Notes under the pieces: generated by a model
What the model was told of the DNA's origin: nothing
The model's input: the letters and a program-made list of their open reading frames with translations, nothing else
Database searches by the model: none
Shown: in pieces, positions 2,628 through 57,535 of the stretch
Layout of the letters: the number at the start of each line of letters is the position of its first letter
Position numbering within the stretch: the stretch's first letter is position 1
Program-made: the position numbers and the translations under genes
From: Neoechinorhynchus agilis
Lineage: Eukaryota; Animalia; Acanthocephala
Assembly (NCBI GenBank): GCA_051530055.1
Contig: CM121343.1
Span: 2,016,389-2,080,388, forward strand
Reading direction: 5' to 3'
DNA length: 64,000 bases

Positions 2628-3915
2628 CACAAATACGGAATGTACAAACTCGGCTAGTATTTTAGCTCGGGGTAAGTGTTGAATTCTTAAATGCTTTTAC
2701 TGGCAAGCCGGTTCTATTGATTCAGATTTAGGAGATTATCATAACACTTCCTTAACAACAACAACACACCAACGCGCTGCCACACCACTACCACAATAAT
2801 CATTGGCACACTCTACATACGTCACCCGTCACCGCAATATTGATCACCACAGACATTCCTTCTCCGGCATCTTTTGTTTTTCCTTCTTGCCATGAAACCA
2901 CACCGATCTCTTACATCACAGAAGTGATTGAATCACTTAGAATCTGATGCATACTGTAAAGAGTTTGTACATTCTTGTCCGGATTCTAAGATACCTCCAG
3001 GAGGCGGGACCCCTTCCTTCAGCGAGGTTTCGTCCCCTTTTTAGTTATGCATCATCGGCGATCGTGGATATTGAACCCTTTGACTCTTAAAACGGGATTA
3101 AAGGCTCAAGTCCACTTGACTTCTTCAGCACAACTACCGAATGTACAAACTCGGCCAGTATTACAGTTCGGGCGGGTATTGAATTCTTAAATGTTTTTAC
3201 TGGCAAGCCGGTTCTATTGATTCAGATTTAGGAGATTATCATAACAATTCCTTAACAACAACACACCAACGCGCTGCCACACCACTACCACAATAATCAT
3301 TGGCACACTCTACATACGTCACCCGTCACCGCAATATTGATCACCACAGACATTCCTTCTCCGGCATCTTTTGTTTTTCCTTCTTGCCATGAAGCCACAC
3401 CGATCTCTTACATCACAGAAGTGATTGAATCACTTAGAATCTGATGCATACTGTAAAGAGTTTGTACATTCTTGTCCGGATTCTAAGATACCTCCAGGAG
3501 GCGGGACCCCTTCCTTCAGCGATGTTTCGTCCCCTTTTTAGTTGTGCATCATCGGCGATCGTTGATATTGAACCCTTTGACTCTTAAACCGGGATTAAAG
3601 GCTCAAGTCCAGTTTACCTTTTCAGCACAACTACGGAATGTACGAACCCGGCCAGTATTTTAGCTCGGGTTAAGTGTTGAATTCTTAAATGCTTTTACTG
3701 GCAAGCCGGTTCTATTGATTCAGATTTAGGACATTCCTTCCTTGGGATTTACAAACTCTTTACCGTATGCATCAGAGTATAAGTGATTCAATCATTTCTC
3801 TGGTGTATGGGGTCGGCGTGGCTTCATGCCAAGAAGGGACACTAAAAAAGCCGAGGAAAGAATGTAATAATCTGAATATATAGAACCGGCTTGCCAGGAA
3901 AAACATTTAAGAAAA
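2628..3915 (-). mobile_element. tRNA-head/hammerhead family locus A: about 2.3 tandem copies of a ~500 bp unit plus an inverted arm at the 5' end
   Basis: gaatgtac(a/g)aac recurs at ~2638, ~3138 and ~3636. The minus strand reads GTAGTTGTGCTGAAG..GGGTTCAATATCC..GGGGACGAAACCTC..GGTCCCGCCTCCTGGAGGTATC. Positions 3745-3915 are an inverted copy of part of the unit (actggcaagccggttc vs gaaccggcttgccag). Confidence 0.85.
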
Positions 3916-8116: not shown

Positions 8117-8156
<40 letters not shown>

Positions 8157-14100: not shown

Positions 14101-14191
14101 ATGTACTTATTTTTATCGATGTTCACTAATAGCCCTGCCAAATTGTACGCGTTTTAGAAGGATTCAGCGCTCCTTTGAAGATCTTCCAAGG
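7907..14191. repeat. 175-bp tandem satellite, ~36 copies, derived from the RT region of the adjacent RTE LINE
   Basis: Unit cactgatgatactgctaagatagcagaatattctgtagag...gaagatcttccaaggaat recurs every 175 nt. The minus strand translates as SLEDLQRSAESFENAYNLAGLLVNIDKNKYIVQ...FCYLSSIIS. Confidence 0.97.
8118..8156. repeat. Poly-C run (39 nt) inside the satellite, probably a sequencing/assembly artefact
   Basis: Pure C homopolymer interrupting a monomer; the flanking monomers are error-rich. Confidence 0.6.
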
Positions 14192-21739: not shown

Positions 21740-23400
21740 ATGAGAGGTAGGGAATGCCAAAATCTATCACACGTTGATCTTATCGGGTGGAATCCGAAGC
21801 TTCGATGTGTAATCTGGCTTGTTTCCATCAAAAATGGATGACGACTGGATATACGCAGCTTCCATGACCACACGACTGAATCGATCGTGACTTCGTAATA
21901 ACACTTGTATGTTATCAAAATCGATCTGATGTCCAGTATTCACAGCGTGTGAGACCACTGCAGAACTCATGTCACTCTTTCTATTTATCGATCGCTTGTG
22001 CTCTTGAATTCTCCTATTTAGATCGTTCGTTTGTCCGATGTAGACCTGATTACATTCACTACATGGAATCCTGTATACTGATCCAGATTGAGGCTCGCCT
22101 TTTTGTTGGGACAAAGTAGTGTGTAAATTACATCCCTTCCGACAATACACACCTACCAGGGGACTGCTACTTCCTGTTTATAGTGTCCTCTGCATCTTCC
22201 TGAACAAGGATTCATCATGGAAGGGTACCTCTAGGAAAATCTTCGCTTTCTTCACATTAGAAACCCTTCCGTGGCTGTCTCACTCCTTCAAGGCATCTTT
22301 TTTCCAAATGTAGAGGATAACCGAGTCTGCCCGACAAGTCGAACAGAAAATTAAGCTCTTTATCCCGTATAAATTCATCACTACAGTGTGTAAAAGCTCT
22401 GTGAAATAACCATCTAATCCTAGACATTTTTTTTATTTTTGCGGTTGCATTGAACTCCATGGAACAAAACGATGCGGGAAACCATATTTCCTGTACACGC
22501 TCGTTGTGTATGAATTCTCCTTTCGTTTAATGGATACATCGAGAAACGAAAAATATCCTCGTTCCTCAATGTCCATTGTCCACTGTATGTGGTCGTCCTT
22601 ACCATTCAGCTGATTGTGAAGCTCCTCAGGAGACAGGACAGAAGAGTCTAGCAATATGAAGGTATCGTCCACATATCTAACCCAGAATGCGATCCCAGGG
22701 ATGGCCTTTAGGAAATCAGATTCCCATTGCCTCATATATAACTCAGCTAAGATAGGAGCTAGAGGACTTCCCATTGCCAAGCCATCTTTTTGGTCATAGT
22801 CGCATCCCTCGAATCGAAAATTGGAAAATCTGGTACAGAACAGTAAAAGTTTTTTCCAGTCAGTCTTAGTGAGTTTCCATTCATTGTTAAGTGAAAGCAA
22901 AGGAATAGCTAGATTGATTGCACGATTCACATGAATTTTTGTGAAGAGGGACGTAACATCAGCAGAAACCATTGTGTAAGTAGAACCCAAATTAGAGCGA
23001 AGTCTTGATATGAAATCCTCACCATTATCAATAGTATTATCGGAAAATCCCATTATACTACGTAGCATATCTGCTATTTTTCGGGACATATCAGTACAGA
23101 ATGCCGAGTGGGCAGCCACTATAGGTCGAAACATAATAGGATTTTTGTGTACCTTGGCGAGAAGGTATAGTCTGGGCGTTTTTGCATCAGTAGAGCGAAG
23201 TGCTTTATAATCATCAGGAGGAAGCTTCCCTTGATTTTTCAATCTCAAAATAAATGAGTTGAATTCCCTTTCACGACTTTTTGTTGGGCATGTACTGAGC
23301 TGCTCAAACTCATTACCGTTGAGGATTTCACGGCCCGCTTCTCGATATTGTTGTGAATTCGCAATTCCTTGATGTCCCTGAGAAGGTCCATTCCACGCTG
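21740..23400 (-). mobile_element. Penelope-like element (RT + C-terminal GIY-YIG endonuclease), frameshifted
   Basis: RT: TPRLYLLAKVHK..FRPIVA, SADVTSLFTKI, QKDGLAMGSPLAPILAELYM, WVRYVDDTF, FSFLDV..VYRK. Downstream GIY-YIG: GSVYRIPCSECNQVYIGQT...RIQEHKR...SHAVNTGHQIDFDN. Confidence 0.93.
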
Positions 23401-27600: not shown

Positions 27601-28882
27601 CCTTTGGTTGTGCGTCATTGGTGGTAATGGATTCGAACCAGTTGACCCTTAACTCGGATCAAGAGCATTAGCCCACTTGACCACCTCGACACAACTACTG
27701 ACATTCCTCCGGATTCTCAGATACCTCCAGGAGGCGGATCAGTGAGTTTTCTCGCTTCAACGAGGTATTTCGTCCCTTTTGGTTGTGCGTCATTGGTGGT
27801 AATGGATTCGAACCAGTTGACCCTTAACTCGGATCAAGAGCATTAGCCCACTTGACCACCTCGACACAACTACTGACATTCCTCCGGATTCTCAGATACC
27901 TCCAGGAGGCGGATCAGTGAGTTTCCTCCTTCAACGAGGTATTTCGTCCTTTTTGGTTGTGCGTCATTGGTGGTAATGGATTCGAACCAGTTGACCCTTA
28001 ACTCGGATCAAGAGCATTAGCCCACTTGACCACCTCGACACAACTACTGACATTCCTCCGGATTCTCAGATACCTCCAGGAGGCGGATCAGTGAGTTTCC
28101 TCCCTTCAACGAGGTATTTCGTCTCTTTTGGTTGTGCGTCATTGGTGGTAATGGATTCGAACCAGTTGACCCTTAACTCGGATCAAGAGCATTAGCCCAC
28201 TTGACCACCTCGACACAACTACTGACATTCCTCCGGATTCTCAGATACCTCCAGGAGGCGGATCAGTGAGTTTCTCTTCAACGAGGTATTTCGTCCTTTT
28301 TGGTTGTGCGTCATTGGTGGTAATGGATTCGAACCAGTTGACCCTTAACTCGGATCAAGAGCATTAGCCCACTTGACCACCTCGACACAACTACTGACAT
28401 TCCTCCGGATTCTCAGATACCTCCAGGAGGCGGATCAGTGAGTTTCCTCCTTCAACGAGGTATTTCGTCCCCTTTGGTTGTGCGTCATTGGTGGTAATGG
28501 ATTCGAACCAGTTGACCCTTAACTCGGATCAAGAGCATTAGCCCACTTGACCACCTCGACACAACTACTGACATTCCTCCGGATTCTCAGATACCTCCAG
28601 GAGGCGGATCAGTGAGTTTCCTCCCTTCAACGAGGTATTTCGTCCCTTTTGGTTGTGCGTCATTGGTGGTAATGGATTCGAACCAGTTGACCCTTAACTC
28701 GGATCAAGAGCATTAGCCCACTTGACCACCTCGACACAACTACTGACATTCCTCCGGATTCTCAGATACCTCCAGGAGGCGGATCAGTTAGTTTCCTCCC
28801 TTCAACGAGGTATTTCGTCCTTTTTGGTTGTGCGTCATTGGTGGTAATGGATTCGAACCAGTTGACCCTGAAACAGGGATCC
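27601..28882 (-). repeat. tRNA-head/hammerhead family locus B: ~174-bp tandem array, 7 full copies plus partial
   Basis: ggttgtgcgtc recurs at 27606, 27781, 27955, 28130, 28302, 28476, 28651 and 28826. The minus-strand unit is GTAGTTGTGTCGAGGTGGTCAAG..GGTTCGAATCC..GGACGAAATACCTC..CTCACTGATCCGCCTCCTGGAGGTATCTGAGAATCC. Confidence 0.95.
27711..27776 (-). ncRNA. Non-circularly permuted hammerhead-ribozyme-like motif (first of 7 copies; 5-nt core deletion, predicted inactive)
   Basis: GGGAC-GAAA-TACCTC, CTCA-CTGAT[GAGTC missing]CC and GAGGTA-TC-TGAG. Stem III (ATACCTC/GAGGTAT) and stem I (CTCA/TGAG) pair perfectly. The missing bases are present in sibling copies at 41301-41312 and 46963-46976. 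Confidence 0.7.
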
Positions 28883-29812: not shown

Positions 29813-32128
29813 TCGATATTTTGGACAAGATAAAAGCACGCGAGGTAGGTTCCGAAAACAATCGGATTAAAAAAAATAATTTCACTTTTCCGTCATAAAA
29901 AGATCATCAACATTTAAAACTTCAAACGGATTTCAAGAGTTAAAATACGAATTAAGTTGACTTAAGATAAAAAAAGTTAAATAATCATTGAAATCGAAAG
30001 GATCATTTTATTGAATTATGTTTATTAATGGTGGAAAAATTGAAGGAATTTGTTAAATTCGATATTTTGGAGTTCCGAAAACAATCGGATTAAAAAAAAA
30101 CATTTCCGTCATAAAAAGATCATCAACATTTAAAAATTCAAACGGATTTCAAGAGTTAAAATACGAATTAAGTTGACTTAAGATAAAAAAAGTTAAATAA
30201 TCATTGAAATCGAAAGCATCATTTTATTGAATTATGTTTATTAATGGTGGAAAAATTGAAGGAATTTGTTAAATTCGATATTTTGGACAAGATAAAAGCA
30301 CGCGAGGTAGGTTCCGAAAACAATCGGATTAAAAAATAATTTCCGTCATATAAAAAGATCATCAACATTTAAAAATTCAAACGGATTTCAAGAGTTAAAA
30401 TACGAATTAAGTTGACTTAAGATAAAAAAGTTAAATAATCATTGAAATCGAAAGGATCATTTTATTGAATTATGTTTATTAATGGTGGAAAAATTGAAGG
30501 AATTTGTTAAATTCGATATTTTGGACAAGATAAAAGCACGCGAGGTAGGTTCCGAAAACAATCGGATTAAAAAATAATTTCCGTCATATAAAAAGATCAT
30601 CAACATTTAAAACTTCAAACGGATTTCAAGAGTTAAAATACGAATTAAGTTGACTTAAGATAAAAAAAGTTAAATAATCATTGAAATCGAAAGGATCATT
30701 TTATTGAATTATGTTTATTAATGGTGGAAAAATTGAAGGAATTTGTTAAATTCGATATTTTTGACAAGATAAAAGCACGCGAGGTAGGTTCCGAAAACAA
30801 TCGGATTAAAAAAAAATTTCCGTCATATAAAAAGATCATCAACATTTAAAAATTCAAACGGATTTCAAGAGTTAAAATACGAATTAAGTTGACTTAAGAT
30901 AAAAAAAGTTAAATAATCATTGAAATCGAAAGGATCATTTTATTGAATTATGTTTATTAATGGTGGAAAAATTGAAGGAATTTGTTAAATTCGATATTTT
31001 GGAGTTCGGAAAACAATCGGATTAAAAAAATAATTTCACTTTTCCGTCATAAAAAGATCATCAACATTTAAAAATTCAAACGGATTTCAAGAGTTAAAAT
31101 ACGAATTAAGTTGACTTAAGATAAAAAAAGTTAAATAATCATTGAAATCGAAAGGATCATTTTATTGAATTATGTTTATTAATGGTGGAAAAATTGAAGG
31201 AATTTGTTAAATTCGATATTTTGGACAAGATAAAAGCACGCAAGGTAGGTTCCGAAAACAATCGGATTAAAAAAATAATTTCACTTTTCCGTCATATAAA
31301 AAGATCATCAACATTTAAAAATTCAAACGGATTTCAAGAGTTAAAATACGAATTAAGTTGACTTAAGATAAAAAAAGTTAAATAATCATTGAAATCGAAA
31401 GGATCATTTTATTGAATTATGTTTATTAATGGTGGAAAAATTGAAGGAATTTGTTAAATTCGATATTTTGGAGTTCCGAAAACAATCGGATTAAAAATAA
31501 TTTCACTTTTCCGTCATAAAAAGATCATCAACATTTAAAAATTCAAACGGATTTCAAGAGTTAAAATACGAATTAAGTTGACTTAAGATAAAAAAAGTTA
31601 AATAATCATTGAAATCGAAAGGATCATTTTATTGAATTATGTTTATTAATGGTGGAAAAATTGAAGGAATTTGTTAAATTCGATATTTTGGAGTTCGGAA
31701 AACAATCGGATTAAAAAAATAATTTCACTTTTCCGTCATAAAAAGATCATCAACATTTAAAACTTCAAACGGATTTCAAGAGTTAAAATACGAATTAAGT
31801 TGACTTAAGATAAAAAAAGTTAAATAATCATTGAAATCGAAAGGATCATTTTATTGAATTATGTTTATTAATGGTGGAAAAATTGAAGGAATTTGTTAAA
31901 TTCGATATTTTGGAGTTCCGAAAACAATCGGATTAAAAAAATAATTTCACTTTTCCGTCATAAAAAGATCATCAACATTTAAAAATTCAAACGGATTTCA
32001 AGAGTTAAAATACGAATTAAGTTGACTTAAGATAAAAAAAGTTAAATAATCATTGAAATCGAAAGCATCATTTTATTGAATTATGTTTGTTAATGGTGGA
32101 AAAATTGAAGGAATTTGTTAAATTCGAT
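29813..32128. repeat. AT-rich tandem satellite, 10 copies, two length classes (~218 and ~237-249 bp), containing a MITE-like inverted repeat
   Basis: tcgatatttt recurs ten times. Long units contain ggacaagataaaagcacgcgaggtag and short ones lack it. atggtggaaaaattgaagg...ttttccgtcat matches dispersed hairpins at 55628-55790 and 63680-63810. Confidence 0.95.
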
Positions 32129-32333: not shown

Positions 32334-32942
32334 CTAGTCAATTTTGTGAGTTTGAAGATGCGATCCGTTTCCATCCGTCTTAGAAAACACGGTCTTTGCT
32401 TTGTCTGATGTTTGTTTAAGGACGCCTTCGACGCGGCCGACATATTTATCGATTGGTTCTCGATGTTTGAGGAATATTGGTTTCACAACTAAATAATAGA
32501 TAACATGACTTCCACCACTGGAGCCCGGCACCATCATCCATAGAAGAAGGAGACATTTTCCAAGCCAATAAAAAGGAATCCAGGATGTAATAAATGAAAG
32601 AATATGTTCGGCGACCATAAATCCAGCGAAGACGACCCAATACATAAGCCATTCGCAATCATCAGCACTCGTCTTTGCTTCAATAGCTCGTATCGTTTGA
32701 AGTGAAGGATAAGCGAATCCAATGAGATCACAGATCAGATTGTTTGCCCAGCCTACGGCTAGATAAACAAAAATCAATAGAACGGATGCATAAAATATGA
32801 TTTCTCGGCGAACTCCGGTCCTAACTTCGATCTTCTTCAATACACCACCGAAAATACTGTCGTCGTTCGCAACCAGGGCATTCACACCCTTCTGAATCCG
32901 ATCCAAAAGCGATTGATGGCTTGGTTTAAGATTCTGCATCAT
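32334..32942 (-). CDS. REEP5: Receptor expression-enhancing protein REEP5/6 (DP1/YOP1 family ER-shaping protein)
   Basis: ICDLIGFAYPSLQTIRAIE....DDCEWLMYWVVFA..., SWIPFYWLGKCLLLLW and GSHVIYYLVVKPIF are TB2/DP1/HVA22 family motifs. The REEP5 versus REEP6 distinction cannot be made by eye. Confidence 0.9.
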   Translation of the reverse strand: MMQNLKPSHQSLLDRIQKGVNALVANDDSIFGGVLKKIEVRTGVRREIIFYASVLLIFVYLAVGWANNLICDLIGFAYPSLQTIRAIEAKTSADDCEWLMYWVVFAGFMVAEHILSFITSWIPFYWLGKCLLLLWMMVPGSSGGSHVIYYLVVKPIFLKHREPIDKYVGRVEGVLKQTSDKAKTVFSKTDGNGSHLQTHKID

Positions 32943-33289: not shown

Positions 33290-36200
33290 AAAAAGATAAT
33301 AAATCGACCGAATCCCCGATGAAAAACGTTAACGCGGTGGGAAAAATAATCCTATCGAGAAACTCTAATAAGCAATCAGGATCGGGATTTTTTCTACCAC
33401 GGAAAATAAATCGACCGAATCCCCAAAAACGAAACACTTTAATGAGAAGAGAAAAGGATCCCTTCGAGAAACCCAAATAAACTAAGAGGATCGGACTTTT
33501 TCACCCAAAGATAGTAAAACGAAAACCCAAAAAAAAAAACCACCAAAAAGCCGAATCCCAAAACGAAACCTTAATGAGAAAAATCTTCGAAAACCCAAAT
33601 AAATAAGAGGATCGGACTTTTTCACCCAAAGATAGCCGAATCCCCAAAAACGAAACCCTTTAATGAGAAGAGAAAAAGATCCCTTCGAGAAACCCAAATA
33701 AAATAAGAGGATCGGACTTTTTCACCCAAAGATAGCCGAATCCCCAAAAACGAAACACTTTAATGAGAAGAGAAAAAGATCCCTTCGAGAAACCCAAATA
33801 AAATAAGAGGATCGGACTTTTTCACCCAAAGATAGCCGAATCCCCAAAAACGAAACACTTTAATGAGAAGAGAAAAAGACATCTTCGAGAAACCCAAATA
33901 AACTAAGAGGATCGGACTTTTTCACCCAAAGATAGCCGAATCCCCAAAAACGAAACCCTTTAATGAGAAGAGAAAAAGATCCCTTCGAGAAACCCAAATA
34001 AACTAAGAGGATCGGACTTTTTCACCCAAAGATAGCCGAATCCCAAAAACGAAACCCTTTAATGAGAAGAGAAAAAGATCCCTTCGAGAAACCCAAATAA
34101 ACTAAGAGGATCGGACTTTTTCACCCAAAGATAGCCGAATCCCCAAAAACGAAACCCTTTAATGAGAAGAGAAAGGATCCCTTCGAGAAACCCAAATAAA
34201 CTAAGAGGATCGGACTTTTTCACCCAAAGATAGCCGAATCCCCAAAAACGAAACACTTTAATGAGAAGAGAAAAAGATCCCTTCGAGAAACCCAAATAAA
34301 ATAAGAGGATCGGACTTTTTCACCCAAAGATAGCCGAATCCCCAAAAGCGAAACCCTTTAATGAGAAGAGAAAAGGATCCCTTCGAGAAACCCAAATAAA
34401 CTAAGAGGATCGGACTTTTTTCACCCAAAGATAGCCGAATCCCCAAAAACGAAACCCTTTAATGAGAAGAGAAAAAGATCCCTTCGAGAAACCCAAATAA
34501 ACTAAGAGGATCGGACTTTTTTCACCCAAAGATAGTAAATCGACCGAATCCCCAAAAGCGAAACCCTTTAATGAGAAGAGAAAAGGATCCCTTCGAGAAA
34601 CCCAAATAAACTAAGAGGATCGGACTTTTTTCACCCAAAGATAGCCGAATCCCCAAAAACGAAACCCTTTAATGAGAAGAGAAAAAGATCCCTTCGAGAA
34701 ACCCAAATAAAATAAGAGGATCGGACTTTTTTCACCCAAAGATAGCCGAATCCCCAAAAACGAAACCCTTTAATGAGAAGAGAAAAAGATCCCTTCGAGA
34801 AACCCAAATAAACTAAGAGGATCGGACTTTTTCACCCAAAGATAGCCGAATCCCCAAAAACGAAACCCTTTAATGAGAAGAGAAAAAGATCCCTTCGAGA
34901 AACCCAAATAAACTAAGAGGATCGGACTTTTTTCACCCAAAGATAGCCGAATCCCCAAAAACGAAACACTTTAATGAGAAGAGAAAAAGATCCCTTCGAG
35001 AAACCCAAATAAACTAAGAGGATCGGACTTTTTCACCCAAAGATAGTAAATCGACCGTCCCCAAAACGAAACACTTTAATGGAGAGAAAAGATCGAAACC
35101 CAAATAAACTAAGAGGATCGGACTTTTTCACCCAAAGATAGCCGAATCCCCAAAAACGAAACCCTTTAATGAGAAGAGAAAAAGATCCCTTCGAGAAACC
35201 CAAATAAACTAAGAGGATCGGACTTTTTCACCCAAAGATAGCCGAATCCCCAAAAACGAAACACTTTAATGAGAAGAGAAAGGATCCCTTCGAGAAACCC
35301 AAATAAACTAAGAGGATCGGACTTTTTCACCCAAAGATAGCCGAATCCCCAAAAACGAAACACTTTAATGAGAAGAGAAAAAGACATCTTCGAGAAACCC
35401 AAATAAAATAAGAGGATCGGACTTTTTTCACCCAAAGATAGTAAATCGACCGAATCCCCAAAAGCGAAACCCTTTAATGAGAAGAGAAAAGGATCCCTTC
35501 GAGAAACCCAAATAAAATAAGAGGATCGGACTTTTTTCACCCAAAGATAGTAAATCGACCGAATCCCCAAAAGCGAAACCCTTTAATGAGAAGAGAAAAG
35601 GATCCCTTCGAGAAACCCAAATAAACTAAGAGGATCGGACTTTTTTCACCCAAAGATAGCCGAATCCCCAAAAGCGAAACCCTTTAATGAGAAGAGAAAA
35701 AGATCCCTTCGAGAAACCCAAATAAAATAAGAGGATCGGACTTTTTTCACCCAAAGATAGTAAATCGACCGAATCCCCAAAAGCGAAACCCTTTAATGAG
35801 AAGAGAAAAGGATCCCTTCGAGAAACCCAAATAAACTAAGAGGATCGGACTTTTTTCACCCAAAGATAGATGACCGAATCCCCAAAAGCGAAACACTTTA
35901 ATGAGAAGAGAAAAAGATCCCTTCGAGAAACCCAAATAAACTAAGAGGATCGGACTTTTTCACCCAAAGATAGCCGAATCCCCAAAAACGAAACACTTTA
36001 ATGAGAAGAGAAAAAGATCGAAACCCAAATAAATAAGAGGATCGGACTTTTTCACCCAAAGATAGTAAATCGACCGAATCCCCAAAAACGAAACACTTTA
36101 ATGAGAAGAGAAAAAGATCGAAACCCAAATAAACTAAGAGGATCGGACTTTTTCACCCAAAGATAGTAAATCGACCGAATCCCCAAAAGCGAAACCCTTT

Positions 36201-37225
36201 AATGAGAAGAGAAAAGGATCCCTTCGAGAAACCCAAATAAACTAAGAGGATCGGACTTTTTTCACCCAAAGATAGCCGAATCCCCAAAAACGAAACCCTT
36301 TAATGAGAAGAGAAAAAGATCCCTTCGAGAAACCCAAATAAAATAAGAGGATCGGACTTTTTTCACCCAAAGATAGTAAATCGACCGAATCCCCAAAAGC
36401 GAAACCCTTTAATGAGAAGAGAAAAGGATCCCTTCGAGAAACCCAAATAAACTAAGAGGATCGGACTTTTTTCACCCAAAGATAGTAAATCGACCGAATC
36501 CCCAAAAGCGAAACCCTTTAATGAGAAGAGAAAAGGATCCCTTCGAGAAACCCAAATAAACTAAGAGGATCGGACTTTTTCACCCAAAGATAGCCGAATC
36601 CCCAAAAACGAAACACTTTAATGAGAAGAGAAAAAGATCCCTTCGAGAAACCCAAATAAACTAAGAGGATCGGACTTTTTCACCCAAAGATAGTAAATCG
36701 ACCGAATCCCCAAAAACGAAACACTTTAATGAGAAGAGAAAAGGATCCCTTCGAGAAACCCAAATAAACTAAGAGGATCGGACTTTTTTCACCCAAAGAT
36801 AGTAAATCGACTTCAACCAAAGATAGTAAAACGACAGATTCCCCAAAAACGAAACACTTTAATGTGATGAGAAAAAGATCGAAACCCAAATAAACTAAGA
36901 GGATCGGACTTTTTTCACCCAAAGATAGTAAATCGACCGAATCCCCAAAAACGAAACACTTTAATGAGAAGAGAAAAGGATCCCTTCGAGAAACCCAAAT
37001 AAACTAAGAGGATCGGACTTTTTTCACCCAAAGATAGTAAATCGACTTCAACCAAAGATAGTAAAACGACCGATTCCCCAAAAACGAAACACTTTAATGT
37101 GATGAGAAAAAGATCGAAACCCAAATAAACTAAGAGGATCGGACTTTTTTCACCCGAAGATAGTAAATCGACCGAATCCCGATGGAGAACTTCCATGCGA
37201 TGGGAAAAATAATCCTTTCGAGAAA
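33290..37225. repeat. 100-111 bp tandem satellite (~37 monomers) with diverged terminal monomers
   Basis: Unit gatag(taaatcga)ccgaatccccaaaaacgaaac(a/c)ctttaatgagaagagaaaa(a/g)gatcccttcgagaaacccaaataaactaagaggatcggactttttcacccaaa. Confidence 0.96.
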
Positions 37226-40300: not shown

Positions 40301-41060
40301 CCATAAAAGATTTCTGCAACAATCACAACTCCATGTCAATTTCTCTAAATGCTTCGAAACAATTCTTTCATTATCCCACAACACCACATCCTACCCCGAT
40401 CTTCCAAATGACATCTCCTTCAGAATTCTGGGTCTTCAATTTTAATCAAATCTAAAATAAGACTAGCAAATTACACTTTCCCTCAAACGCAATACCTTTA
40501 AAATTTACCTACACAAACGCCTCCGCCATTTATGAATCCCTACGCTCGCTCTTTCCCAATTTTACTTCAGCTTTTTTATCCTTCTTCACCTACGACTATC
40601 CAGTCTTTTGCAACCTGTCCAAATCACAAATCCGTCGCCTTTAAATGTTTTATAGAAGATGCTCTAAAATTCTAACAGTTGATGTTTCACCGCTCACTGA
40701 ATGCCAACAAACAAAACCCCTCTCAACCCTGTCACCAAATGTTTTAACTATTTTCAGTCCACTTTTCACATGATCACAACACTCGTAATCCCAATTCCTT
40801 TCATCATCCCTCTACCTCCGCTCCTTTTTCCATGCTGCCCAATCTTCTGGGATATCGAAACCCTAAATGAATCGGAGGAATAAACCAAACTCACAAACTC
40901 TCACAAAAGCACCTGACATTCCCTTCCGACCGAACACGTAATCCACTGCAAAATCAACAACTGCGTTCAGTGAACAAATCTGAATTCAAGTGTTAATGAG
41001 GACCCAAAGGTACGTGGGTCCTATTATTTTTAATTAACAAATAAACGTGTTGTAAATCTT
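37400..41060 (+). mobile_element. Degenerate near-full-length LINE of the CR1/L2/Jockey group (ORF1, APE, RT, 3' stem-loop)
   Basis: ORF1-like KDRNRTIFISEMPE and PRLLKVTF; RT IINLSFLYGIYPSCLKTAKVILVPKK, LQFGF, GVPQGAVLSPLLFNIFLDDL and LYTDDLTL; 3' hairpin aggaccca-aaggtacg-tgggtcct at ~40999-41022. Confidence 0.85.
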
Positions 41061-41065
41061 AAAGG

Positions 41066-41385
41066 TTACTGGCAAGCCGGATCTTTATTATTCATGTTAT
41101 TACATCCCTTCCTCGGCTTTTTGGCATGAAGTTCCGCGGATCTCTTGCCTAACACAGAGTTATAAATACTGGCCGAGTTTGTACATTCCGTGGCTGTGCA
41201 CGAGTCCTGAATCTCTGTTTCAGGGGCAATGTTCGAAAGCCAGTATCGCCAATGAAGCATAATCACAGGGGACCAAATACCGCCGAAACGAGGAAACTCA
41301 CCGATGAGTCTCGCCTCCTCAATAATGAATCTGAGAATCCGGAGGGATGTAACCAAAAAGCCGAGGAAGGGATGCAATAACCCGA
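41066..41385 (+). mobile_element. tRNA-head/hammerhead family locus C: single degenerate copy with 5' inverted arm
   Basis: actggccgagtttgtacattccgtggctgtg..gttcgaaagcc..ggggaccaaatacc..ggaaactcaccgatgagtctcgcctcct..atctgagaatcc. catcccttcctcggctttttgg (~41101-41122) is inverted relative to ccaaaaagccgaggaagggatg (~41353-41374). Confidence 0.8.
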
Positions 41386-42035: not shown

Positions 42036-42523
42036 CTTTCAGCGAATGGCCGATGAAGCGAATCTTTTTCCCGGAACATCTCAATTCAATGTAATCACGA
42101 AGTCTCCAAATCTTTTGATTGGAAACGATTTTGTCTCTGATTGGAGCAACCACTTAGAGAATCGACTAACTTGAATTATACTGATAATCGTGAACCAAAG
42201 CGACGACATTAATGACAAGGAGCGGATCTTGGGAAGATTGAACTATTTAAAAATTGTGGTGATCCCCCGGATCTCGGAATATTCTGAATTGAGATATTTC
42301 GAAAGAATCCTTCCCTTGGATTGGAAAGCCAGTTCCAAGAAGAAAATCCCTCCCCGAAAAAAGTGACTATACGTCGAACCACGCAAACGAAGATGAAGCT
42401 GACGAAAATTCCTGCGCGCGTCCACAAAGCCACGGTGATTCTTCCGGATAAAGCGCAGGATTCCACTAGAGGACGCCTTTATTTCACTGGTTTTGCGTCC
42501 GTATTCGATCAAAGTTCTTGGAG

Positions 42524-43208
42524 ATGAACGTCTTCCGTTTGGCTGGAGATTTGTCGCATTTAATTGCAATCTTAATTTTGCTACTGAAGATATGGCGTAC
42601 ACAAAGCTGCTTGGGTGTTTCGGGGAAATCGATATGTCTTTATGCGATTGTATTTGTGAGTCGATATTTGGATCTCTTTACGCATTACGTCTCAGCGTAT
42701 AACTCATTTATGAAACTTTTCTACATATCGGCTACGTTTTTGACTCTTTATTTGATATATAAGAAATTCCGGGTGACTTACAACTGGAACAACGATACGT
42801 TCAAAATCCAATATCTGATCGTACCATGCCTTGCTCTAGCGCTTGTTATCAATAGAGCTTTCACTTTCCTTGAAATCATGTGGACTTTCTCTATTTATCT
42901 TGAATCTGTAGCCGTATTACCGCAGTTGTTCATGATCAGTAAAACCGGAGAAGCCGAATCAATCACTACTCATTACCTATTCGCATTAGGAATATACAGA
43001 GCGTTTTATATCATGAATTGGGCGTATCGATATTTTTTTGAACGATATCTCGACTTGATTGCGATCGTTGCAGGTTGCTTACAAACTGTCCTCTATTGCG
43101 ATTTCTTCTATCTATATGTTACCAAAGGTATCCCAGTGAAAATACTTCCTGAAAAATCATCTCTTCCATTTAGTCATCAAAGGCAAGAGACTGTCATTGC
43201 CGGCATAA
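42524..43208 (+). CDS. KDELR: ER lumen protein-retaining (KDEL) receptor; exons 42524-43127 and 43174-43208
   Basis: [65 protein letters not shown]. Removing a 46-nt GT..AG intron restores the canonical C-terminus [11 protein letters not shown]. Confidence 0.97.
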
Positions 43209-43434
43209 TGTAAGGAACGAATACCTGCAATTTCTCGACCTATAAGAAACTTGTGTTATGAATGTGCTGGCCGGTAAGGGAAAACTATTCTCGGAAACTT
43301 AAATCTGTTTAAGAAATCTTGGTGCTTTCCTTGACAATCTTTTAAATCTTCAAGTCTAGTCAAATCAACGGTTTATTCGACCAGCCGGTTACTAGAACCA
43401 AAACCATCGCTTCCTACTGTGGTCTGAATAACCG

Positions 43435-46400
43435 GATTTGACTGTAATTTTAAAAGCCAAGTGCTGAAATCGTAAATCTGGAGCGATTTAGCCCAAAGCA
43501 AAATTGGCTGAGTTTGTTGTACATTTCGTAGTTGTCTCGAGGTGGTCTAGTTGATTTGAGTCCGAATTCCATGTTCAAAGGGTTCAGAATCCACGAATTT
43601 GACTGTAATTTTAAAGGGCAAGTGCTGAAATCGTAAATCTGGAGCGATTTAGCCCAAGGCGAAATTGGCTGAGTTTGGGTACATTTCGTAGTTGTCTCGA
43701 GGTGGTCTAGTTGATTTGAGCCCGAATCCCAGGTTCAAGGGTTCAGAATCCATGGATTTGACTTAATTTAAAAGCAAGTGCTGAAATCGCAAATCTGAGC
43801 GATTGCCCAAAGCAAAATTGGCTGAGTTTGTAGTACATTTCGTAGTTGTCTCGAGGTGGTCTAGTTGATTTGAGCCCGAATCCCAGGTTCAAAGGGTTCA
43901 GAATCCATGGATTTGACTGTAATTTTAAAAGCCAAGTGCTGAAATCGCAAATCTGGAGCGATTTAGCCCAAAGCAAAATTGGCTGAGTTTGTTGTACATT
44001 TCGTAGTTGTCTCGAGGTGGTCTAGTTGATTTGAGCCCGAATCCCAGGTTCAAAGGGTTCAGAATCCATGGATTTGACTGTAATTTTAAAGGGCAAGTGC
44101 TGAAATCGCAAATCTGGAGCGATTTAGCCCAAAGCAAAATTGGCTGAGTTTGTTGTACATTTCGTAGTTGTGTCGAGGTGGTCTAGTTGATTTGAGCCCG
44201 AATCCCAGGTTCAAAGGGTTCAGAATCCATGGATTTGACTGTAATTTTAAAAGGCAAGTGCTGAAATCGCAAATCTGGAGCGATTTTGCCCAAAGCAAAA
44301 TTGGCTGAGTTTGTTGTACATTCGTAGTTGTGTCGAGGTGGTCTAGTTGATTTGAGCCCGAATCCCAGGTTCAAAGGGTTCAGAATCCATGGATTTGACT
44401 GTAATTTTAAAAGGCAAGTGCTGAAATCGCAAATCTGGAGCGATTTAGCCCAAAGCAAAATTGGCTGAGTTTGTTGTACATTTCGTAGTTGTCTCGAGGT
44501 GGTCTAGTTGATTTGAGCCCGAATCCCAGGTTCAAAGGGTTCAGAATCCATGGATTTGACTGTAATTTTAAAAGCCAAGTGCTGAAATCGCAAATCTGGA
44601 GCGATTTAGCCCAAAGCAAAATTGGCTGAGTTTGTTGTACATTTCGTAGTTGTGTCGAGGTGGTCTAGTTGATTTGAGCCCGAATTCCAGGTTCAAAGGG
44701 TTCAGAATCCATGGATTTGACTGTAATTTTAAAAGCCAAGTGCTGAAATCGCAAATCTGGAGCGATTTAGCCCAAAGCAAAATTGGCTGAGTTTGTTGTA
44801 CATTCGATAGTTGTGTCGAGGTGGTCTAGTTGATTTGAGCCCGAATCCCAGGTTCAAAGGGTTCAGAATCCATGGATTTGACTGTAATTTTAAAAGGCAA
44901 GTGCTGAAATCGCAAATCTGGAGCGATTTAGCCCAAAGCAAAATTGGCTGAGTTTGTTGTACATTTCGTAGTTGTCTCGAGGTGGTCTAGTTGATTTGAG
45001 CCCGAATTCCAGGTTCAAAGGGTTCAGAATCCATGGATTTGACTGTAATTTTAAAAGGCGCTGAAATCGCAAATCTGGAGCGATTTAGCCCAAGCAAAAT
45101 TGGCTGAGTTTGTTGTACATTTCGTAGTTGTGTCGAGGTGGTCTAGTTGATTTGAGCCCGAATCCCATTCAAAGGGTTCAGAATCCATGGATTTGACTGT
45201 AATTTTAAAAGGCAAGTGCTGAAATCGCAAATCTGGAGCGATTTAGCCCAAAGCAAAATTGGCTGAGTTTGTTGTACATTTCGTAGTTGTCTCGAGGTGG
45301 TCTAGTTGATTTGAGCCCGAATCCCAGGTTCAAAGGGTTCAGAATCCATGGATTTGACTGTAATTTTAAAAGGCAAGTGCTGAAATCGCAAATCTGGAGC
45401 GATTTAGCCCAAAGCAAAATTGGCTGAGTTTGTTGTACATTTCGTAGTTGTCTCGAGGTGGTCTAGTTGATTTGAGCCCGAATTCCATGTTCAAAGGGTT
45501 CAGAATCCATGGATTTGACTGTAATTTTAAAGGGCAAGTGCTGAAATCGTAAATCTGGAGCGATTTTGCCCAAAGCAAAATTGGCTGAGTTTGTTGTACA
45601 TTTCGTAGTTGTGTCGAGGTGGTCTAGTTGATTTGAGCCCGAATCCCAGGTTCAAAGGGTTCAGAATCCATGGATTTGACTGTAATTTTAAAAGGCAAGT
45701 GCTGAAATCGTAAATCTGGAGCGATTTAGCCCAAAGCAAAATTGGCTGAGTTTGTTGTACATTCGATAGTTGTGTCGAGGTGGTCTAGTTGATTTGAGCC
45801 CGAATCCCAGGTTCAAAGGGTTCAGAATCCATGGATTTGACTGTAATTTTAAAAGGCAAGTGCTGAAATCGCAAATCTGGAGCGATTTAGCCCAAAGCAA
45901 AATTGGCTGAGTTTGTTGTACATTTCGTAGTTGTCTCGAGGTGGTCTAGTTGATTTGAGCCCGAATTCCATGTTCAAAGGGTTCAGAATCCATGGATTTG
46001 ACTGTAATTTTAAAGGGCAAGTGCTGAAATCGTAAATCTGGAGCGATTTAGCCCAAAGCAAAATTGGCTGAGTTTGTTGTACATTTCGTAGTTGTCTCGA
46101 GGTGGTCTAGTTGATTTGAGCCCGAATCCCAGGTTCAAAGGGTTCAGAATCCATGGATTTGACTGTAATTTTAAAAGCCAAGTGCTGAAATCGCAAATCT
46201 GGAGCGATTTAGCCCAAAGCAAAATTGGCTGAGTTTGTTGTACATTCCGTAGTTGTGTCGAGGTGGTCTAGTTGATTTGAGCCCGAATCCCAGGTTCAAA
46301 GGGTTCAGAATCCATGGATTTGACTGTAATTTTAAAAGGCAAGTGCTGAAATCGTAAATCTGGAGCGATTTTGCCCAAAGCAAAATTGGCTGAGTTTGTT

Positions 46401-46960
46401 GTACATTCGATAGTGGTGTCGAGGTGGTCTAGTTGATTTGAGCCCGAATTCCAGGTTCAAAGGGTTCAGAATCCATGGATTTGACTGTAATTTTAAAAGG
46501 CAAGTGCTGAAATCGTAAATCTGGAGCGATTTAGCCCAAAGCAAAATTGGCTGAGTTTGTAGTACATTTCGTAGTTGTCTCGAGGTGGTCTAGTTGATTT
46601 GAGCCGGAATCCCAGGTTCAAAGGGTTCAGGATCTATGGATTTAACTGTAATTCTAAAAGCCAAGTGCTAAAATCGTAAATCTGGAGCGATTTAGCCCAA
46701 AGCAAAATTGGCTGAGTTTGTTGTACATTTCGTAGTTGTCTCGAGGTGGTCTAGTTGATTTGAGCCCGAATTCCATGTTCAAAGGGTTCAGAATCCATGG
46801 ATTTGACTGTAATTTTAAAGGGCAAGTGCTGAAATCGCAAATCTGGAGCGATTTACCCCAAAGCAAAATTAGCTGAGTTTGTTATACATTTCGTAGTTGT
46901 ATCGAGGTGGTCTAGTTGACTTGAGCACAAATCCCAGGGTTAGGGATTCAGAATCCATTA
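43435..46960 (+). repeat. tRNA-head family locus D: 161-bp tandem array (~22 copies) of the tRNA-like head only
   Basis: Unit gtacatttcGTAGTTGT(C/G)TCGAGGTGGTCTAGTTGATTTGAGCCCGAATCCCAGGTTCAAAGGGTTCAGAATCCatggatttgactg... with a period of 161 nt. Confidence 0.96.
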
Positions 46961-47345
46961 TCGCCGATGACGTCCCGCCTCCTCGAGAGGTATCTGAGGA
47001 TCCGGACGGGGATATACAAAACCCATAATCGTATGGTTCAGTGTTTTGAATGATTTATTGCGACTCCCTGACCAATAAAACGGTGGGCTGTGAGCCCAAC
47101 GAAAAATAATCAGCCGTGTAAGGGATATTCACTTCAACACTTATAAAATGTATCCGGCTAGCCAGATACTTGCCCCAATCTAGAAACTGGAAAAGTTTAT
47201 ACATTCCGTAGTTGTGTCGAGGTGGTCTATTGGACTTTAGCCCGAATCCCAGGGTCAAAGGGTTCAGAATCCATTATCACCGATGACGTCCCGCCTCCTC
47301 GAGAGGTATCTGAGGATCTCATTGGGGATGTACAGACTCGGAACG
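46961..47345 (+). mobile_element. Continuation of locus D into the full family body (~320-bp unit with internally deleted hammerhead)
   Basis: tcgccgatgacgtcccgcctcctcgagaggtatctgaggatcc occurs at 46961 and (with tcaccgatg) at ~47278. The body matches locus F. Confidence 0.85.
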
Positions 47346-48989: not shown

Positions 48990-49135
48990 ATTCCACCGAT
49001 TTATTGGTCAGGGAATCGCATTAAATCACTTAAAACCCTGAACGATACGATTATGAGTTTTGTACATCCCCGCCCGGATCCTCAGATACCTCTCGAGGAG
49101 GCGGCATCGGCGATAATGGATTATGAACCCTAATA
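48990..49135 (-). mobile_element. tRNA-head/hammerhead family locus E (fragment)
   Basis: cggatcctcagatacctctcgaggaggcggcatcggcgataatggatt and tttattggtcagggaatcgcattaaatca are reverse complements of locus D/F sequence. Confidence 0.85.
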
Positions 49136-49470
49136 CCCAAATTCAGCCTTAACCCATTTACACTTAAAAATATAATCGGCTGAGCCACACATAAGCTCAA
49201 ATAATCGGTTTATGCCTTTGTCTAGATCCGTTATATAAATGCCAGCGGCTTTACATTGAAGTATCGTTAATTTGTGATGATCTGACGCCATTTGTATGCG
49301 TGATTGTTCGGATAAGCACAAGGCGGAGAGATATCTGATTGAACCAAGAAGCAATAATTGCTCCTTGTCTTCATCCGCTTCTTTATATTGAAGGTCGGTT
49401 TCACCACAAAAAAGACGGGAATCCACAATTTTCGGTATCTTATGTCAAATTTCTTAATCATTTCCATCAC
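49130..49470 (-). CDS. Unidentified coding-like fragment (frameshifted ORF pair)
   Basis: Two overlapping ORFs with protein-like composition (DSRLFCGETDLQYKEADEDKEQLLLLGSIRYLSALCL...). No family recognised; it ends at locus E. Confidence 0.25.
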
Positions 49471-56699: not shown

Positions 56700-57535
56700 A
56701 GTTTTTATCTTATGTCTGGTTAGCCGGATAAACTTTTTTAAGTGTTGAAATGAACATCCCTTAAAAGGCAAATAATTTTCTTTGGGCTAGGGACGTACAA
56801 AACCCATAATCGTATCGTTCAGGGTTTTAAATGATTTAATGCGATTCCCTGACCAATAAAACGGTGAGCTATGAGCCAAAGGAAAATAATCAGCCGTGTA
56901 AGGGATATTCACTTCAGCACTTAAAAAATGTACCCGGCTAGCCAGATACTTGCCCCAATCTAAAAACTGGAAAAGTTTATACATTCCGTAGTTGTGTCGA
57001 GGTGGTCTATTGGATTTGAGTTCGAATCCCAGGGTCAAAAGGTTCAGAATCCATTATCGCCGATGACGCCCCGCCTCCTCGAGAGGTATCTGAGGATCCG
57101 GGCGGGAATGTACAAAAGTCGTAATCGTGTGGTTCAGGGTTTTAAGAACACCACAAAAAACCAACCACCCCCCAAACAACTGATTTAATGCGATTCCCTG
57201 ACCAATAAAACGGTGAGCTATGAGCCAAAGGAAAATAATCAGCCGTGTAAGGGATATTCACTTCAGCACTTAAAAAATGTACCCGGCTAGCCAGATACTT
57301 GCCCCGATCTTAAAACTGGAAAAGTTTATACATTCCGTAGTTGTGTCGAGGTGGTCTATTGGATTTGAGTTCGAATCCCAGGGTCAAAAGGTTCAGAATC
57401 CATTATCGCCGATGACGCCCCGCTTCCTCGAGAGGTATCTGAGGATCCGGACGGGAATGTACAAAAGTCGTAATCGTGTGGTTCAGGGTTTTAAGTGATT
57501 TAATGCGATTCTCTGACCAATAAATAGGCGGGCCG
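56700..57535 (+). mobile_element. tRNA-head/hammerhead family locus F: ~2.3 tandem units of ~325-360 bp with 5' inverted arm
   Basis: cattccGTAGTTGTGTCGAGGTGGTCTATTGGATTTGAGTTCGAATCC..ccgatgacgccccgc(c/t)tcctcgagaggtatctgaggatcc occurs twice (~56985, ~57335). Positions 56710-56790 are an inverted copy of ~56875-56950. Confidence 0.88.

What the first reader, a model, noticed from the sequence alone, without database searches (positions are those of the whole stretch)
27601..28882. Hammerhead ribozyme with non-circularly permuted strand order, carried by a tRNA-headed repeat family
Seen in sequence: on the minus strand each monomer contains, in this order, (b) GGGAC-GAAA-TACCTC, (a) CTCA-CTGAT..CC and (c) GAGGTA-TC-TGAG. 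Sibling copies supply the five bases missing here (41297-41312 CTCACCGATGAGTCTC; 46963-46976 CCGATGACGTCCC; 3006-3010 GTCCC). The reconstructed consensus is GGGAC GAAA TACCTC gytgaaggagg aaa CTCA CTGATGA GTCCC gcctcctg GAGGTA TC TGAG. All three helices close perfectly on the catalytic core: II GTCCC/GGGAC, III ATACCTC/GAGGTAT and I CTCA/TGAG, with an AUC cleavage triplet. Established: types I, II and III hammerheads are the circular orders a-b-c, b-c-a and c-a-b. Here the order is b-a-c, so no helix is closed by a hairpin loop. The two linkers (AGGAGG and CCTCCT) are themselves complementary and could form a fourth helix. Natural non-circularly permuted hammerheads have been reported, as I recall, but I know of none coupled to a tRNA-derived head. 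Inference: an ancestral self-cleaving, Pol III-transcribed retroelement. No copy in this window is intact.
Basis: partly seen in the sequence, partly recalled or inferred. Interest (0 to 1): 0.92.

Follow-up and report, generated by a model that had tools for sequence, protein, structure and literature searches.

The report
Dead hammerhead-like motif in tRNA-headed repeat
This is a young tandem array of a short repeat that begins with a decayed tRNA-like promoter and carries the three pieces of a hammerhead ribozyme in a rare scrambled order, but every copy we could read is broken, so it is a testable lead and not a demonstrated ribozyme.

Summary
The sequence facts hold. Window 27603-28872 (minus strand) is 7.3 copies of a 175-bp monomer, 97-100% identical. 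Each monomer has a 72-nt tRNA-like head, then GGGAC-GAAA-TACCTC, CTCA-CTGAT|CC and GAGGTA-TC-TGAG.

This block order is the 'type GCS' non-circular hammerhead permutation of Eckert et al. 2023. That type is known from one bacterial sequence, which cleaves slowly in vitro.

No ribozyme is shown here.
- All monomers lack G8, A9 and the 3' strand of stem II.
- All 12 family copies in 69.6 kb are broken, each lineage differently.
- None of the 16 proposed base pairs shows a compensatory change.
- The younger subfamily lacks blocks G and C altogether.
- Rfam finds nothing, but it models only the canonical orders.

Against pure chance, the majority-rule ancestor is formally an intact GCS hammerhead. 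Shuffled sequence gives this about 0.001 times per 70 kb.

A tRNA-derived head joined to a hammerhead is already known from schistosome Smα/Sjα, with the canonical type I order.

Best reading: a satellite-amplified, catalytically dead member of a tRNA-headed short retroelement family. I put about 0.2 on a once-active GCS hammerhead. The rest of the genome could not be reached.

The parts
27603..28872 (-). Tandem array, 7.3 x 175-bp monomers. Monomer starts on the minus strand: 28745, 28570, 28396, 28224, 28049, 27875, 27700. The first copy is 5'-truncated. The last copy ends just before block G.
   Evidence: TRF; BLAST of the monomer gives 97-100% identity; monomer alignment
28663..28734 (-). 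tRNA-like head of a representative monomer (72 nt, degenerate cloverleaf, nominal anticodon CGA, A box at 8-18, B box at 52-62). Equivalent heads lie at 27618-27689, 27793-27864, 27967-28038, 28142-28213, 28314-28385 and 28488-28559.
   Evidence: ARAGORN -ps90 gives seven hits in 69.6 kb, all of them here; B box positions
28632..28646 (-). Block G: GGGAC GAAA TACCTC (stem II 5' strand, G12-A15.1, stem III 5' strand). Also at 27762, 27936, 28111, 28283, 28457 and 28807 (start positions), with GGGAC, AGGAC or GAGAC.
28603..28616 (-). Remnant of block C: CTCA CTGAT|CCGCC. G8, A9 and the GUC of stem II are missing in all seven monomers.
28586..28597 (-). Block S: GAGGTA TC TGAG (stem III 3' strand, U16.1, C17, stem I 3' strand). 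It is part of a 17-nt stretch, GGTATCTGAGRATCCGG, kept in all 12 family copies.
41160..41350 (+). Old sibling with all three blocks, each damaged. Block G at 41269-41283 reads CAAA (G12C). Block C at 41297-41312 reads CCGATGA GTCTC (U4C). In block S at 41324-41335 the stem III strand is destroyed.
2628..3735 (-). 2.2 units of a 497-bp long form. It has the head, block G (GGGGAC GAAA), GGTCCC and block S, but no block C. An inverted truncated copy adjoins at 3747-3913 (+).
46882..47345 (+). Form A copies (349-bp unit, 1.3 units). The head is followed directly by CCGATGACGTCCCGCCTCC and block S. Blocks G and C are absent. Further Form A copies lie at 56790-57560 (+) and 48994-49138 (-).
43434..46958 (+). 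161-bp x 22 satellite built from the family's 3' end plus its tRNA-like head, abutting the Form A copy.

Best explanation
The feature is a young, satellite-like tandem array of a shortened member of an older family of short elements.

Each element begins with a decayed tRNA-like head carrying RNA polymerase III A and B boxes. The family sits in the genome as head-to-tail partial multimers. Three loci also have an inverted truncated copy beside them. That insertion pattern is described for Penelope-like elements and their non-autonomous derivatives, and a degenerate Penelope-like element lies 5 kb away.

In the older family members the region behind the head holds the three hammerhead blocks in the order G-C-S (type GCS). 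The array monomers have lost G8, A9 and the 3' strand of stem II. They therefore cannot self-cleave, either alone or as multimers.

The array grew at the DNA level, by unequal exchange or by insertion as a multimer, after that loss.

I judge the hammerhead likeness to be non-functional in everything observed. Its origin is more likely a by-product of local inverted repeats plus a duplicated CCGATGA box than a selected ribozyme. A fossil ribozyme is a serious minority possibility.

Shown: array structure, head, block order, and the defects in each copy. Inferred: Pol III transcription, Penelope-type mobilisation, DNA-level amplification, and absence of catalysis.
For: - Array and identity.
- tRNA-like head.
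- All seven monomers read CTGATCCGCC.
- Every one of 12 copies is defective. The 27k copies carry the 5-nt loss. The 41k copy has U4C, G12C and a broken stem III. The four 3k-type copies lack block C. The L067 2.7k copy lacks block G and has G5A. The five Form A copies lack G and C.
- No compensatory change in 16 pairs, and the covariation score equals the shuffle mean.
- B-type lineages are 72-75% alike, while Form A copies are 80-98% alike. The block-free form is therefore the younger one and still spread.
- Differences among monomers fall only in the GGGAC strand and the purine linker.
- The 17-nt stretch around block S is kept in copies that have no partner strands.
- Block C (TCACCGATGA) is a 9/10 copy of the box ending the head (TCGCCGATGA).
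- MFE folds of the consensus are nested hairpins that bury the core, with z = -0.5.
- No Rfam ribozyme or strict-descriptor hit in 69.6 kb.
- Partial multimers with adjacent inverted copies, matching the PLE architecture in PMC8557442.
- PLE RT and GIY-YIG ORFs at 21767-23248.
Against: - The majority-rule ancestor is formally an intact type-GCS hammerhead with stems of 4, 5 and 5 bp. This is expected only about 0.001 times per 70 kb of shuffled sequence.
- Stem II is the archetypal GUCCC/GGGAC with a G10.1-C11.1 pair.
- The motif sits in just the kind of tandem, promoter-headed element in which animal hammerheads are normally found.
- The only tested GCS RNA cleaves, so the topology is viable.
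- Only 69.6 kb of one genome could be examined.
- The RNA folds are not rod-like, and no 3' end is shared with the neighbouring PLE. The Penelope link therefore rests on architecture alone.
Confidence: 0.6

Rival explanations
1. Fossil, or elsewhere still active, type-GCS hammerhead. The family's ancestor, or the common ancestor of the 27k and L067-2.7k lineages, carried a working G-C-S hammerhead. It cut Pol III multimer transcripts 3' of GAGGUAUC, as retrozyme and Smα hammerheads do. The copies seen here are decayed descendants.
For: - The majority-rule ancestor is a strict GCS hit, with a chance rate of 0.0013 per 69.6 kb.
- GAAA, UAUC, GGGAC/GUCCC and CUCA/UGAG are each the majority state across independent lineages.
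- The two changes in the 10.x strand (41k and L067-3.8k) keep pairing as G-U.
- GCS-1 cleaves at 0.014 per min. The linkers here are longer: 15 and 8 nt, against about 3-5 and 2 nt in GCS-1.
- The monomer has no TTTT run, so Pol III read-through multimers are plausible.
Against: - 0 of 12 copies is intact.
- All three lineages that keep block C have a core defect.
- There are no compensatory changes.
- Form A spread without blocks G and C.
- Stem I has only 4 bp.
- Strong nested alternative folds exist.
- With the paralogous head box as outgroup, position 4 is ancestrally C (CCGAUGA).
- The predicted cleavage site is not at the monomer junction.
Confidence: 0.2
2. Scrambled relic of a canonical type I hammerhead. 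A retrozyme- or Penelope-derived hammerhead was rearranged by template switching or by duplication and deletion in a multimer. The pieces are truly hammerhead-derived but were dead on arrival in the G-C-S order.
For: - Archetypal CUGAUGA-GUCCC and GGGAC-GAAA strings.
- Two C-like boxes flank block G (C'-G-C-S), as expected after a partial duplication.
- The family shows many independent indels and inverted junctions.
- A PLE is present in the window.
Against: - No canonical hammerhead with these stems, or any other, is found in 69.6 kb.
- At least two rearrangements are needed.
- C' has neither a stem I nor a stem II partner.
Confidence: 0.12
3. A hammerhead assembled across neighbouring monomers of a multimer transcript. 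One version uses block C of unit n with blocks G and S of unit n+1, giving the canonical order with very large loops. The other uses S(n), G(n+1) and C(n+1), giving type SGC with the tRNA-like head in the linker.
For: The tandem arrangement makes GCS, CSG and SGC circular permutations of one another. Dimeric hammerheads are known in amphibian retrozymes.
Against: Block C in every monomer lacks G8, A9 and its stem II strand, so no combination of monomers restores a core. The loops would be 110-130 nt.
Confidence: 0.02
4. The family is a tRNA-bearing miniature LTR element (Helenus-type TRIM), and the 'multimers' are LTR-internal-LTR arrays.
For: - Helenus elements carry a tRNA-like sequence in their LTRs and form tandem arrays (PMC10886601).
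- Purine-rich tracts precede some unit starts, and the units contain TG...CA strings.
Against: - No primer-binding site follows the candidate LTR end.
- Loci end at different unit positions.
- No 4-5 bp target duplications were seen.
- Inverted adjacent copies are not an LTR feature.
Confidence: 0.05

Closest known systems
Type-GCS hammerhead permutation (Eckert, Friedrich, Weinberg & Weinberg, NAR 2023, PMC10085705)
   Same: The block order is identical: GAAA block, then CUGAnGA block, then cleavage-site block. All three stems cross one another. My descriptor classes both the published GCS-1 RNA and the consensus here as GCS.
   Different: - GCS-1 is a single intact bacterial sequence (Caballeronia) of 51 nt that cleaves in vitro. 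Here no intact copy exists.
- The host here is a eukaryote.
- The linkers are longer (15 and 8 nt).
- The motif sits in a multicopy repeat.
Schistosome Smα / Sjα SINE-like elements
   Same: A tRNA-related Pol III head and a hammerhead motif in a short, high-copy element that also forms tandem arrays (PMC2770079).
   Different: - Smα carries an active canonical type I hammerhead that Rfam detects. Here the order is G-C-S, the copies are dead and Rfam is silent.
- Sequence homology could not be tested because no Smα sequence was at hand.
Animal non-LTR retrozymes (Cervera & de la Peña, NAR 2020, PMC7229834)
   Same: Tandem repeats of 150-450 bp, co-existence with Penelope-like elements, and a multimeric arrangement.
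   Different: - Retrozymes have an intact type I hammerhead per unit and highly self-paired RNAs.
- Here there is no intact hammerhead.
- The folds are not exceptional: z = -1.65 for the monomer and 0.07 for the 349-nt unit.
- No tRNA-like head is mentioned for retrozymes in the passages of that paper that I read.
Penelope-like element insertion architecture and non-autonomous derivatives (Craig et al., MBE 2021, PMC8557442)
   Same: Partial head-to-tail tandems, and an inverted 5'-truncated copy abutting the upstream end at three loci.
   Different: No 3'-end similarity to the one PLE remnant in the window. Locus ends are heterogeneous.
SINE-derived satellite DNA
   Same: A short tRNA-headed element amplified into near-identical tandem monomers. 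There are two such arrays from the same family within 20 kb (27603-28872 and 43434-46958).
   Different: No A-rich or LINE-like tail and no target-site duplications were seen, so SINE status itself is unproven.

Membership tests
Hammerhead ribozyme (any block order, including type GCS) | Block C: contiguous C3-U4-G5-A6-N7-G8-A9 flanked directly by strands of stems I and II | tested here: not met
   27k monomers read CUGAU|CC, with no G8, A9 or 10.1-10.3. The 41k copy reads CCGAUGA. The L067-2.7k copy reads CUAAUGA. The block is absent from the four 3k-type and five Form A copies.
Hammerhead ribozyme (any block order, including type GCS) | Block G: G12-A13-A14-A15.1 flanked by strands of stems II and III | tested here: met
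   GGGAC GAAA TACCTC is present in the array (stem II strand intact in 3 of 7 monomers) and in the 3k-type copies. It reads CAAA in 41k and is absent in Form A.
Hammerhead ribozyme (any block order, including type GCS) | Block S: U16.1-H17 cleavage site flanked by strands of stems III and I | tested here: met
   GAGGTA-TC-TGAG is present in all array monomers. Stem III has 7 bp and stem I has 4 bp.
Hammerhead ribozyme (any block order, including type GCS) | All three stems and the full core present in one molecule | tested here: not met
   The strict descriptor (six orders, stems of at least 4/4/4 bp) gives 0 hits in 69.6 kb on both strands. It does recognise GCS-1 and the consensus.
Hammerhead ribozyme (any block order, including type GCS) | Covariation supporting stems I-III | tested here: not met
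   0 of 16 pairs change on both sides. The score is 0.035 against a shuffle mean of 0.036. There are few independent lineages, so power is low.
Hammerhead ribozyme (any block order, including type GCS) | Site-specific Mg2+-dependent self-cleavage | not testable with these tools
   This needs in vitro transcription. Rfam negatives say nothing about GCS, because the models cover only the canonical orders.
tRNA-derived SINE | 5' head derived from a tRNA, with A and B boxes at tRNA spacing | tested here: met
   A box at 8-18 and B box GGTTCGAATCC at 52-62. ARAGORN -ps90 hits only these seven heads. The cloverleaf is degenerate, and there is no hit with default ARAGORN or the Rfam tRNA model.
tRNA-derived SINE | Dispersed copies with a common 3' end (A-rich, repeat or LINE-derived tail) and target-site duplications | tested here: not met
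   Loci end at different unit positions. No tail and no duplications were seen.
Animal non-LTR retrozyme | Tandem units of 150-450 bp | tested here: met
   Units of 175, 349 and 497 bp.
Animal non-LTR retrozyme | Canonical type I hammerhead in each unit | tested here: not met
   No hammerhead by Rfam or by descriptor.
Animal non-LTR retrozyme | Highly self-paired unit RNA, expressed as circular RNA | tested here: not met
   MFE z-scores are -1.65 (175 nt) and 0.07 (349 nt). Expression is not testable here.
Non-autonomous Penelope-like derivative | Partial tandems plus an adjacent inverted 5'-truncated copy | tested here: met
   Seen at three loci: 3747-3913 (+) against 3735-2628 (-), 56715-56788 (-) against 56790 onward (+), and 41047-41131 (-) against 41149 onward (+). 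Not seen at the 27k array itself.
Non-autonomous Penelope-like derivative | 3'-end similarity to an autonomous PLE of the same genome | tested here: inconclusive
   No similarity to the single degenerate PLE in the window. Other PLEs of the genome could not be reached.
Helenus-type TRIM | LTRs with TG...CA ends, primer-binding site, polypurine tract and 4-5 bp target duplications | tested here: not met
   No primer-binding site follows the candidate LTR end. Locus ends are inconsistent. This was checked by eye only.

The most novel reading that the evidence does not exclude
Elsewhere in this genome, or in the family's recent past, intact copies carry a working type-GCS hammerhead. It sits behind a tRNA-like Pol III promoter and cuts multimer transcripts 3' of GAGGUAUC. 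This would be the first eukaryotic non-circularly permuted hammerhead. It would also be the first multicopy natural family of the one permutation that Eckert et al. 2023 left marked '?'.
Probability: 0.15. Interest if true: 0.85.

Novelty: new member of a known kind. Interest (0 to 1): 0.4.

Why it matters
Five of the six possible hammerhead block orders have natural support. Type GCS rests on one bacterial sequence with no covariation, and I found no later report in the library searched.

A repeat family whose consensus is a GCS hammerhead would supply many sequences for a covariation test. It would extend non-circular RNA permutation to eukaryotes. It would also tie that permutation to the promoter-plus-ribozyme design already known from schistosome Smα elements.

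If the resemblance is empty, as I think more likely, the locus is an ordinary SINE-derived satellite. It would also be a useful caution. A consensus stitched from broken siblings can look like a perfect ribozyme while no real molecule is one.

Tried and rejected
1. Rfam at gathering score and at E up to 10, on the whole window and on two sub-regions, gave no hammerhead, tRNA or other ribozyme.

2. A metagenome scan for GGTATCTGAGRATCCGG gave 66 loci. None had family-like flanks, so all are chance matches.

3. I made three attempts to reach other parts of the source genome through proteins: eIF3c, the Penelope-like RT, and a concatenated Gypsy gag-pol. No same-genome paralogue was returned, and no relative was above 46% identity. 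A look-up of the KDEL-receptor ORF found no record. Only 5.6 kb upstream was gained (L067).

4. I tested whether the 175-bp satellite at 8159-14191, which has CTGATGA in each monomer, is related or is a hammerhead. It shows no significant homology and has no GAAA or stems.

5. I looked for family remnants or an inverted copy in the flanks of the 27k array and found none. Hammerhead-like fragments seen there by eye are at chance level.

6. I considered CpG decay as the source of CTGAT from CCGAT. CpG observed/expected is 1.08, so there is no support.

7. I considered rod-like retrozyme folding. The z-scores are unremarkable.

8. A literature search for the motif strings returned only unrelated primers. 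Ferbeyre et al. 1998 is not held.
Full report
**What is there**

On the minus strand, window 27603-28872 is a tandem array of 7.3 monomers of 175 bp (TRF: 98% matches; BLAST: 97-100% identity). Each monomer reads: a 9-nt leader (GTAGTTGTG), a 72-nt tRNA-like head, CCAATGACGCACAACCAAAA, GGGAC-GAAA-TACCTC, GTTGAAGGGAGGAAA, CTCA-CTGAT|CCGCCTCCTG, GAGGTA-TC-TGAG, and AATCCGGAGGAATGTCA.

The head has an A-box-like TGGTCAAGTGG at positions 8-18 and a perfect B box GGTTCGAATCC at 52-62. Default ARAGORN and Rfam do not call it. ARAGORN at a 90% threshold returns exactly seven hits in 69.6 kb, and all are these heads. It is therefore a decayed tRNA-derived Pol III promoter region.

The monomer has no TTTT run, so Pol III read-through into multimers is conceivable. 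This is an inference.

One coordinate is off by one base. Three qualifications matter.
- The stem II 5' strand is GGGAC in only three of seven monomers (AGGAC in three, GAGAC in one). All differences among the internal monomers fall in this strand and in the purine linker.
- Every monomer reads CTGATCCGCC. G8, A9 and the first three bases of the stem II 3' strand are absent.
- The sibling at 46964-46976 is not block C. It is the CCGATGA box that ends the tRNA-like head, fused to TCCCGCC with an extra C.

**The family**

The source is chromosome CM121343.1 of assembly GCA_051530055.1. The organism has no close relative in the protein collection: the best eIF3c match is 30% identical.

In the window plus 5.6 kb upstream (locus L067) I found 12 copies or copy groups that carry the block S region.

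| Copy group | Block G | Block C | Other damage |
|---|---|---|---|
| 27k array | present | CUGAU, 5 nt lost | none noted |
| 41k copy | CAAA (G12C) | CCGAUGA-GUCUC (U4C) | stem III strand of block S destroyed |
| Four 3k-type copies (497-bp units) | present, with GGUCCC | absent | none noted |
| L067-2.7k copy | absent | CUAAUGA-UUCCC (G5A) | none noted |
| Five Form A copies (349-bp units) | absent | absent | only CCGATGAC-GTCCC remains |

The B-type lineages are 72-75% identical to one another, while Form A copies are 80-98% identical. The full form is therefore the older one. Form A looks like a deletion between the two TC(G/A)CCGATGA boxes, and it still multiplied.

The copies lie as head-to-tail partial multimers. 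Three loci have an inverted truncated copy abutting their upstream end. This is the architecture described for Penelope-like elements and their non-autonomous derivatives (PMC8557442). Animal retrozymes have recently been argued to be such derivatives. A degenerate Penelope-like element, with RT and GIY-YIG ORFs, lies at 21767-23248. It shares no 3' end with the family.

Locus ends are heterogeneous. Clean SINE or LTR membership is therefore not met. A second satellite from the same family (161 bp x 22) lies at 43434-46958.

**What the block order corresponds to**

Eckert et al. 2023 (PMC10085705) divide the hammerhead into block C (CUGAnGA), block G (GAAA) and block S (the cleavage site). They show that natural non-circular permutations exist: type SGC is well supported and type CSG has modest support. 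They found that type in one sequence only, from Caballeronia. It cleaves at 0.014 per min in vitro and has no covariation, and they marked its biological relevance as unclear. I found no later report.

The topology is therefore chemically viable. The linkers here (15 and 8 nt) are longer than in GCS-1 (about 3-5 and 2 nt).

In a tandem transcript, GCS, CSG and SGC are circular permutations of one another.

The coupling of a tRNA-related head to a hammerhead is not new. Smα and Sjα of schistosomes have it, with the canonical type I order (PMC2770079).

**Tests of the ribozyme claim**

1. Extant sequence. It finds nothing in the real 69.6 kb. With up to two core defects allowed, the real sequence has 26 hits against about 23 per shuffle.

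2. Ancestor. [quoted passage not shown]
   - In 1500 dinucleotide shuffles, such a hit arises 0.0013 times per 69.6 kb for GCS and 0.0067 times for all six orders. The resemblance of the ancestor is therefore not trivial.
   - Only position 4 is ambiguous: T in two lineages and C in one.
   - With the paralogous head box as outgroup, C is favoured.
   - CpG decay cannot be invoked, because CpG observed/expected is 1.08.

3. Covariation. On 12 sequences and 16 proposed pairs, no pair changes on both sides. The score equals the shuffle mean. Two C-to-U changes keep G-U pairing, which is weak evidence. Power is low.

4. Dispensability. The younger Form A lacks blocks G and C. The array expanded after the 5-nt loss. 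The 17-nt GGTATCTGAGRATCCGG is kept even where it has no partner strands, so it is conserved for some reason other than a hammerhead.

5. Folding. With flanks included, CCUCC pairs with the downstream GGAGG. The fourth helix nests inside stem III and leaves one nucleotide to reach the far end of stem II. By simple geometry it competes with the active fold (inference).

6. Retrozyme-like rod structure is not supported: z = -1.65 and 0.07.

**Verdict**

What is in the window is a catalytically dead, DNA-amplified array of a tRNA-headed short retroelement. The hammerhead likeness is real at the level of the family consensus but unsupported as a function. My weights are:
- about 0.6 on the non-functional reading;
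- 0.2 on a once-active, or elsewhere active, type-GCS ribozyme;
- about 0.1 on a scrambled relic of a canonical hammerhead.

The decisive data are the rest of this genome and one in vitro transcription experiment. Neither was within reach. All three protein searches failed to return same-genome paralogues, and the metagenome scan gave only chance hits.

Noticed in passing
window 8118-14191: A run of 39 C is followed by a 175-bp satellite of 34.8 copies. Every monomer contains CTGATGA, but there is no GAAA or matching stems, so it is not a hammerhead. It has no significant homology to the 27k monomer despite the identical period.
   Followed up: yes
window 43434-46958: 161-bp x 22 satellite built from the same family's 3' end plus its tRNA-like head, abutting a Form A copy. 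This is a second independent satellite from the one family within 20 kb.
   Followed up: partly
window 21767-23248 (-): Degenerate canonical Penelope-like element. The RT ORF is at 22433-23248 and a GIY-YIG endonuclease ORF (…VYRIPC…YIGQT…) is at 21767-22150. No hammerhead motif was found around it.
   Followed up: partly
window 1-2409 (-) and L067 4680-8012: Frameshifted Gypsy-type gag-pol remnant lying between two arrays of the 497-bp family unit. No same-genome paralogue is present in the protein collection.
   Followed up: partly
window 3747-3913, 41047-41131, 56715-56788: Inverted truncated family copies abut the upstream end of three family loci. This is the architecture reported for Penelope-like insertions.
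   Followed up: partly
window 4398-7043 (+): Intronless 881-aa eIF3c gene whose nearest database relative is only 30% identical. The source organism appears phylogenetically isolated in the collection. KDEL-receptor (42518-43213) and TB2/DP1 (32334-32942) ORFs also look intron-poor.
   Followed up: no
window 33415-37180 and 30069-32128: Strongly A-skewed 100-bp satellite (33 copies, AT skew up to 0.41), and an AT-rich (25% GC) array of 222/461-bp repeats.
   Followed up: no
window 59538-59657 (-): 120-nt near-perfect hairpin with a sub-threshold match to a plant microRNA family (MIR9408: 43 bits against a gathering score of 90). Probably a foldback repeat.
   Followed up: no
whole window: CpG observed/expected is 1.08 and TpA is 0.67, so there is no sign of methylation-driven CpG decay.
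   Followed up: yes
window 57800-62104 (-): Multi-exon ATG16-like gene (ATG16 domain ORF at 61565-62104, WD-repeat-like ORFs at 58104-58418). A 195-bp x 3.5 repeat at 60649-61337 lies in a presumed intron.
   Followed up: no
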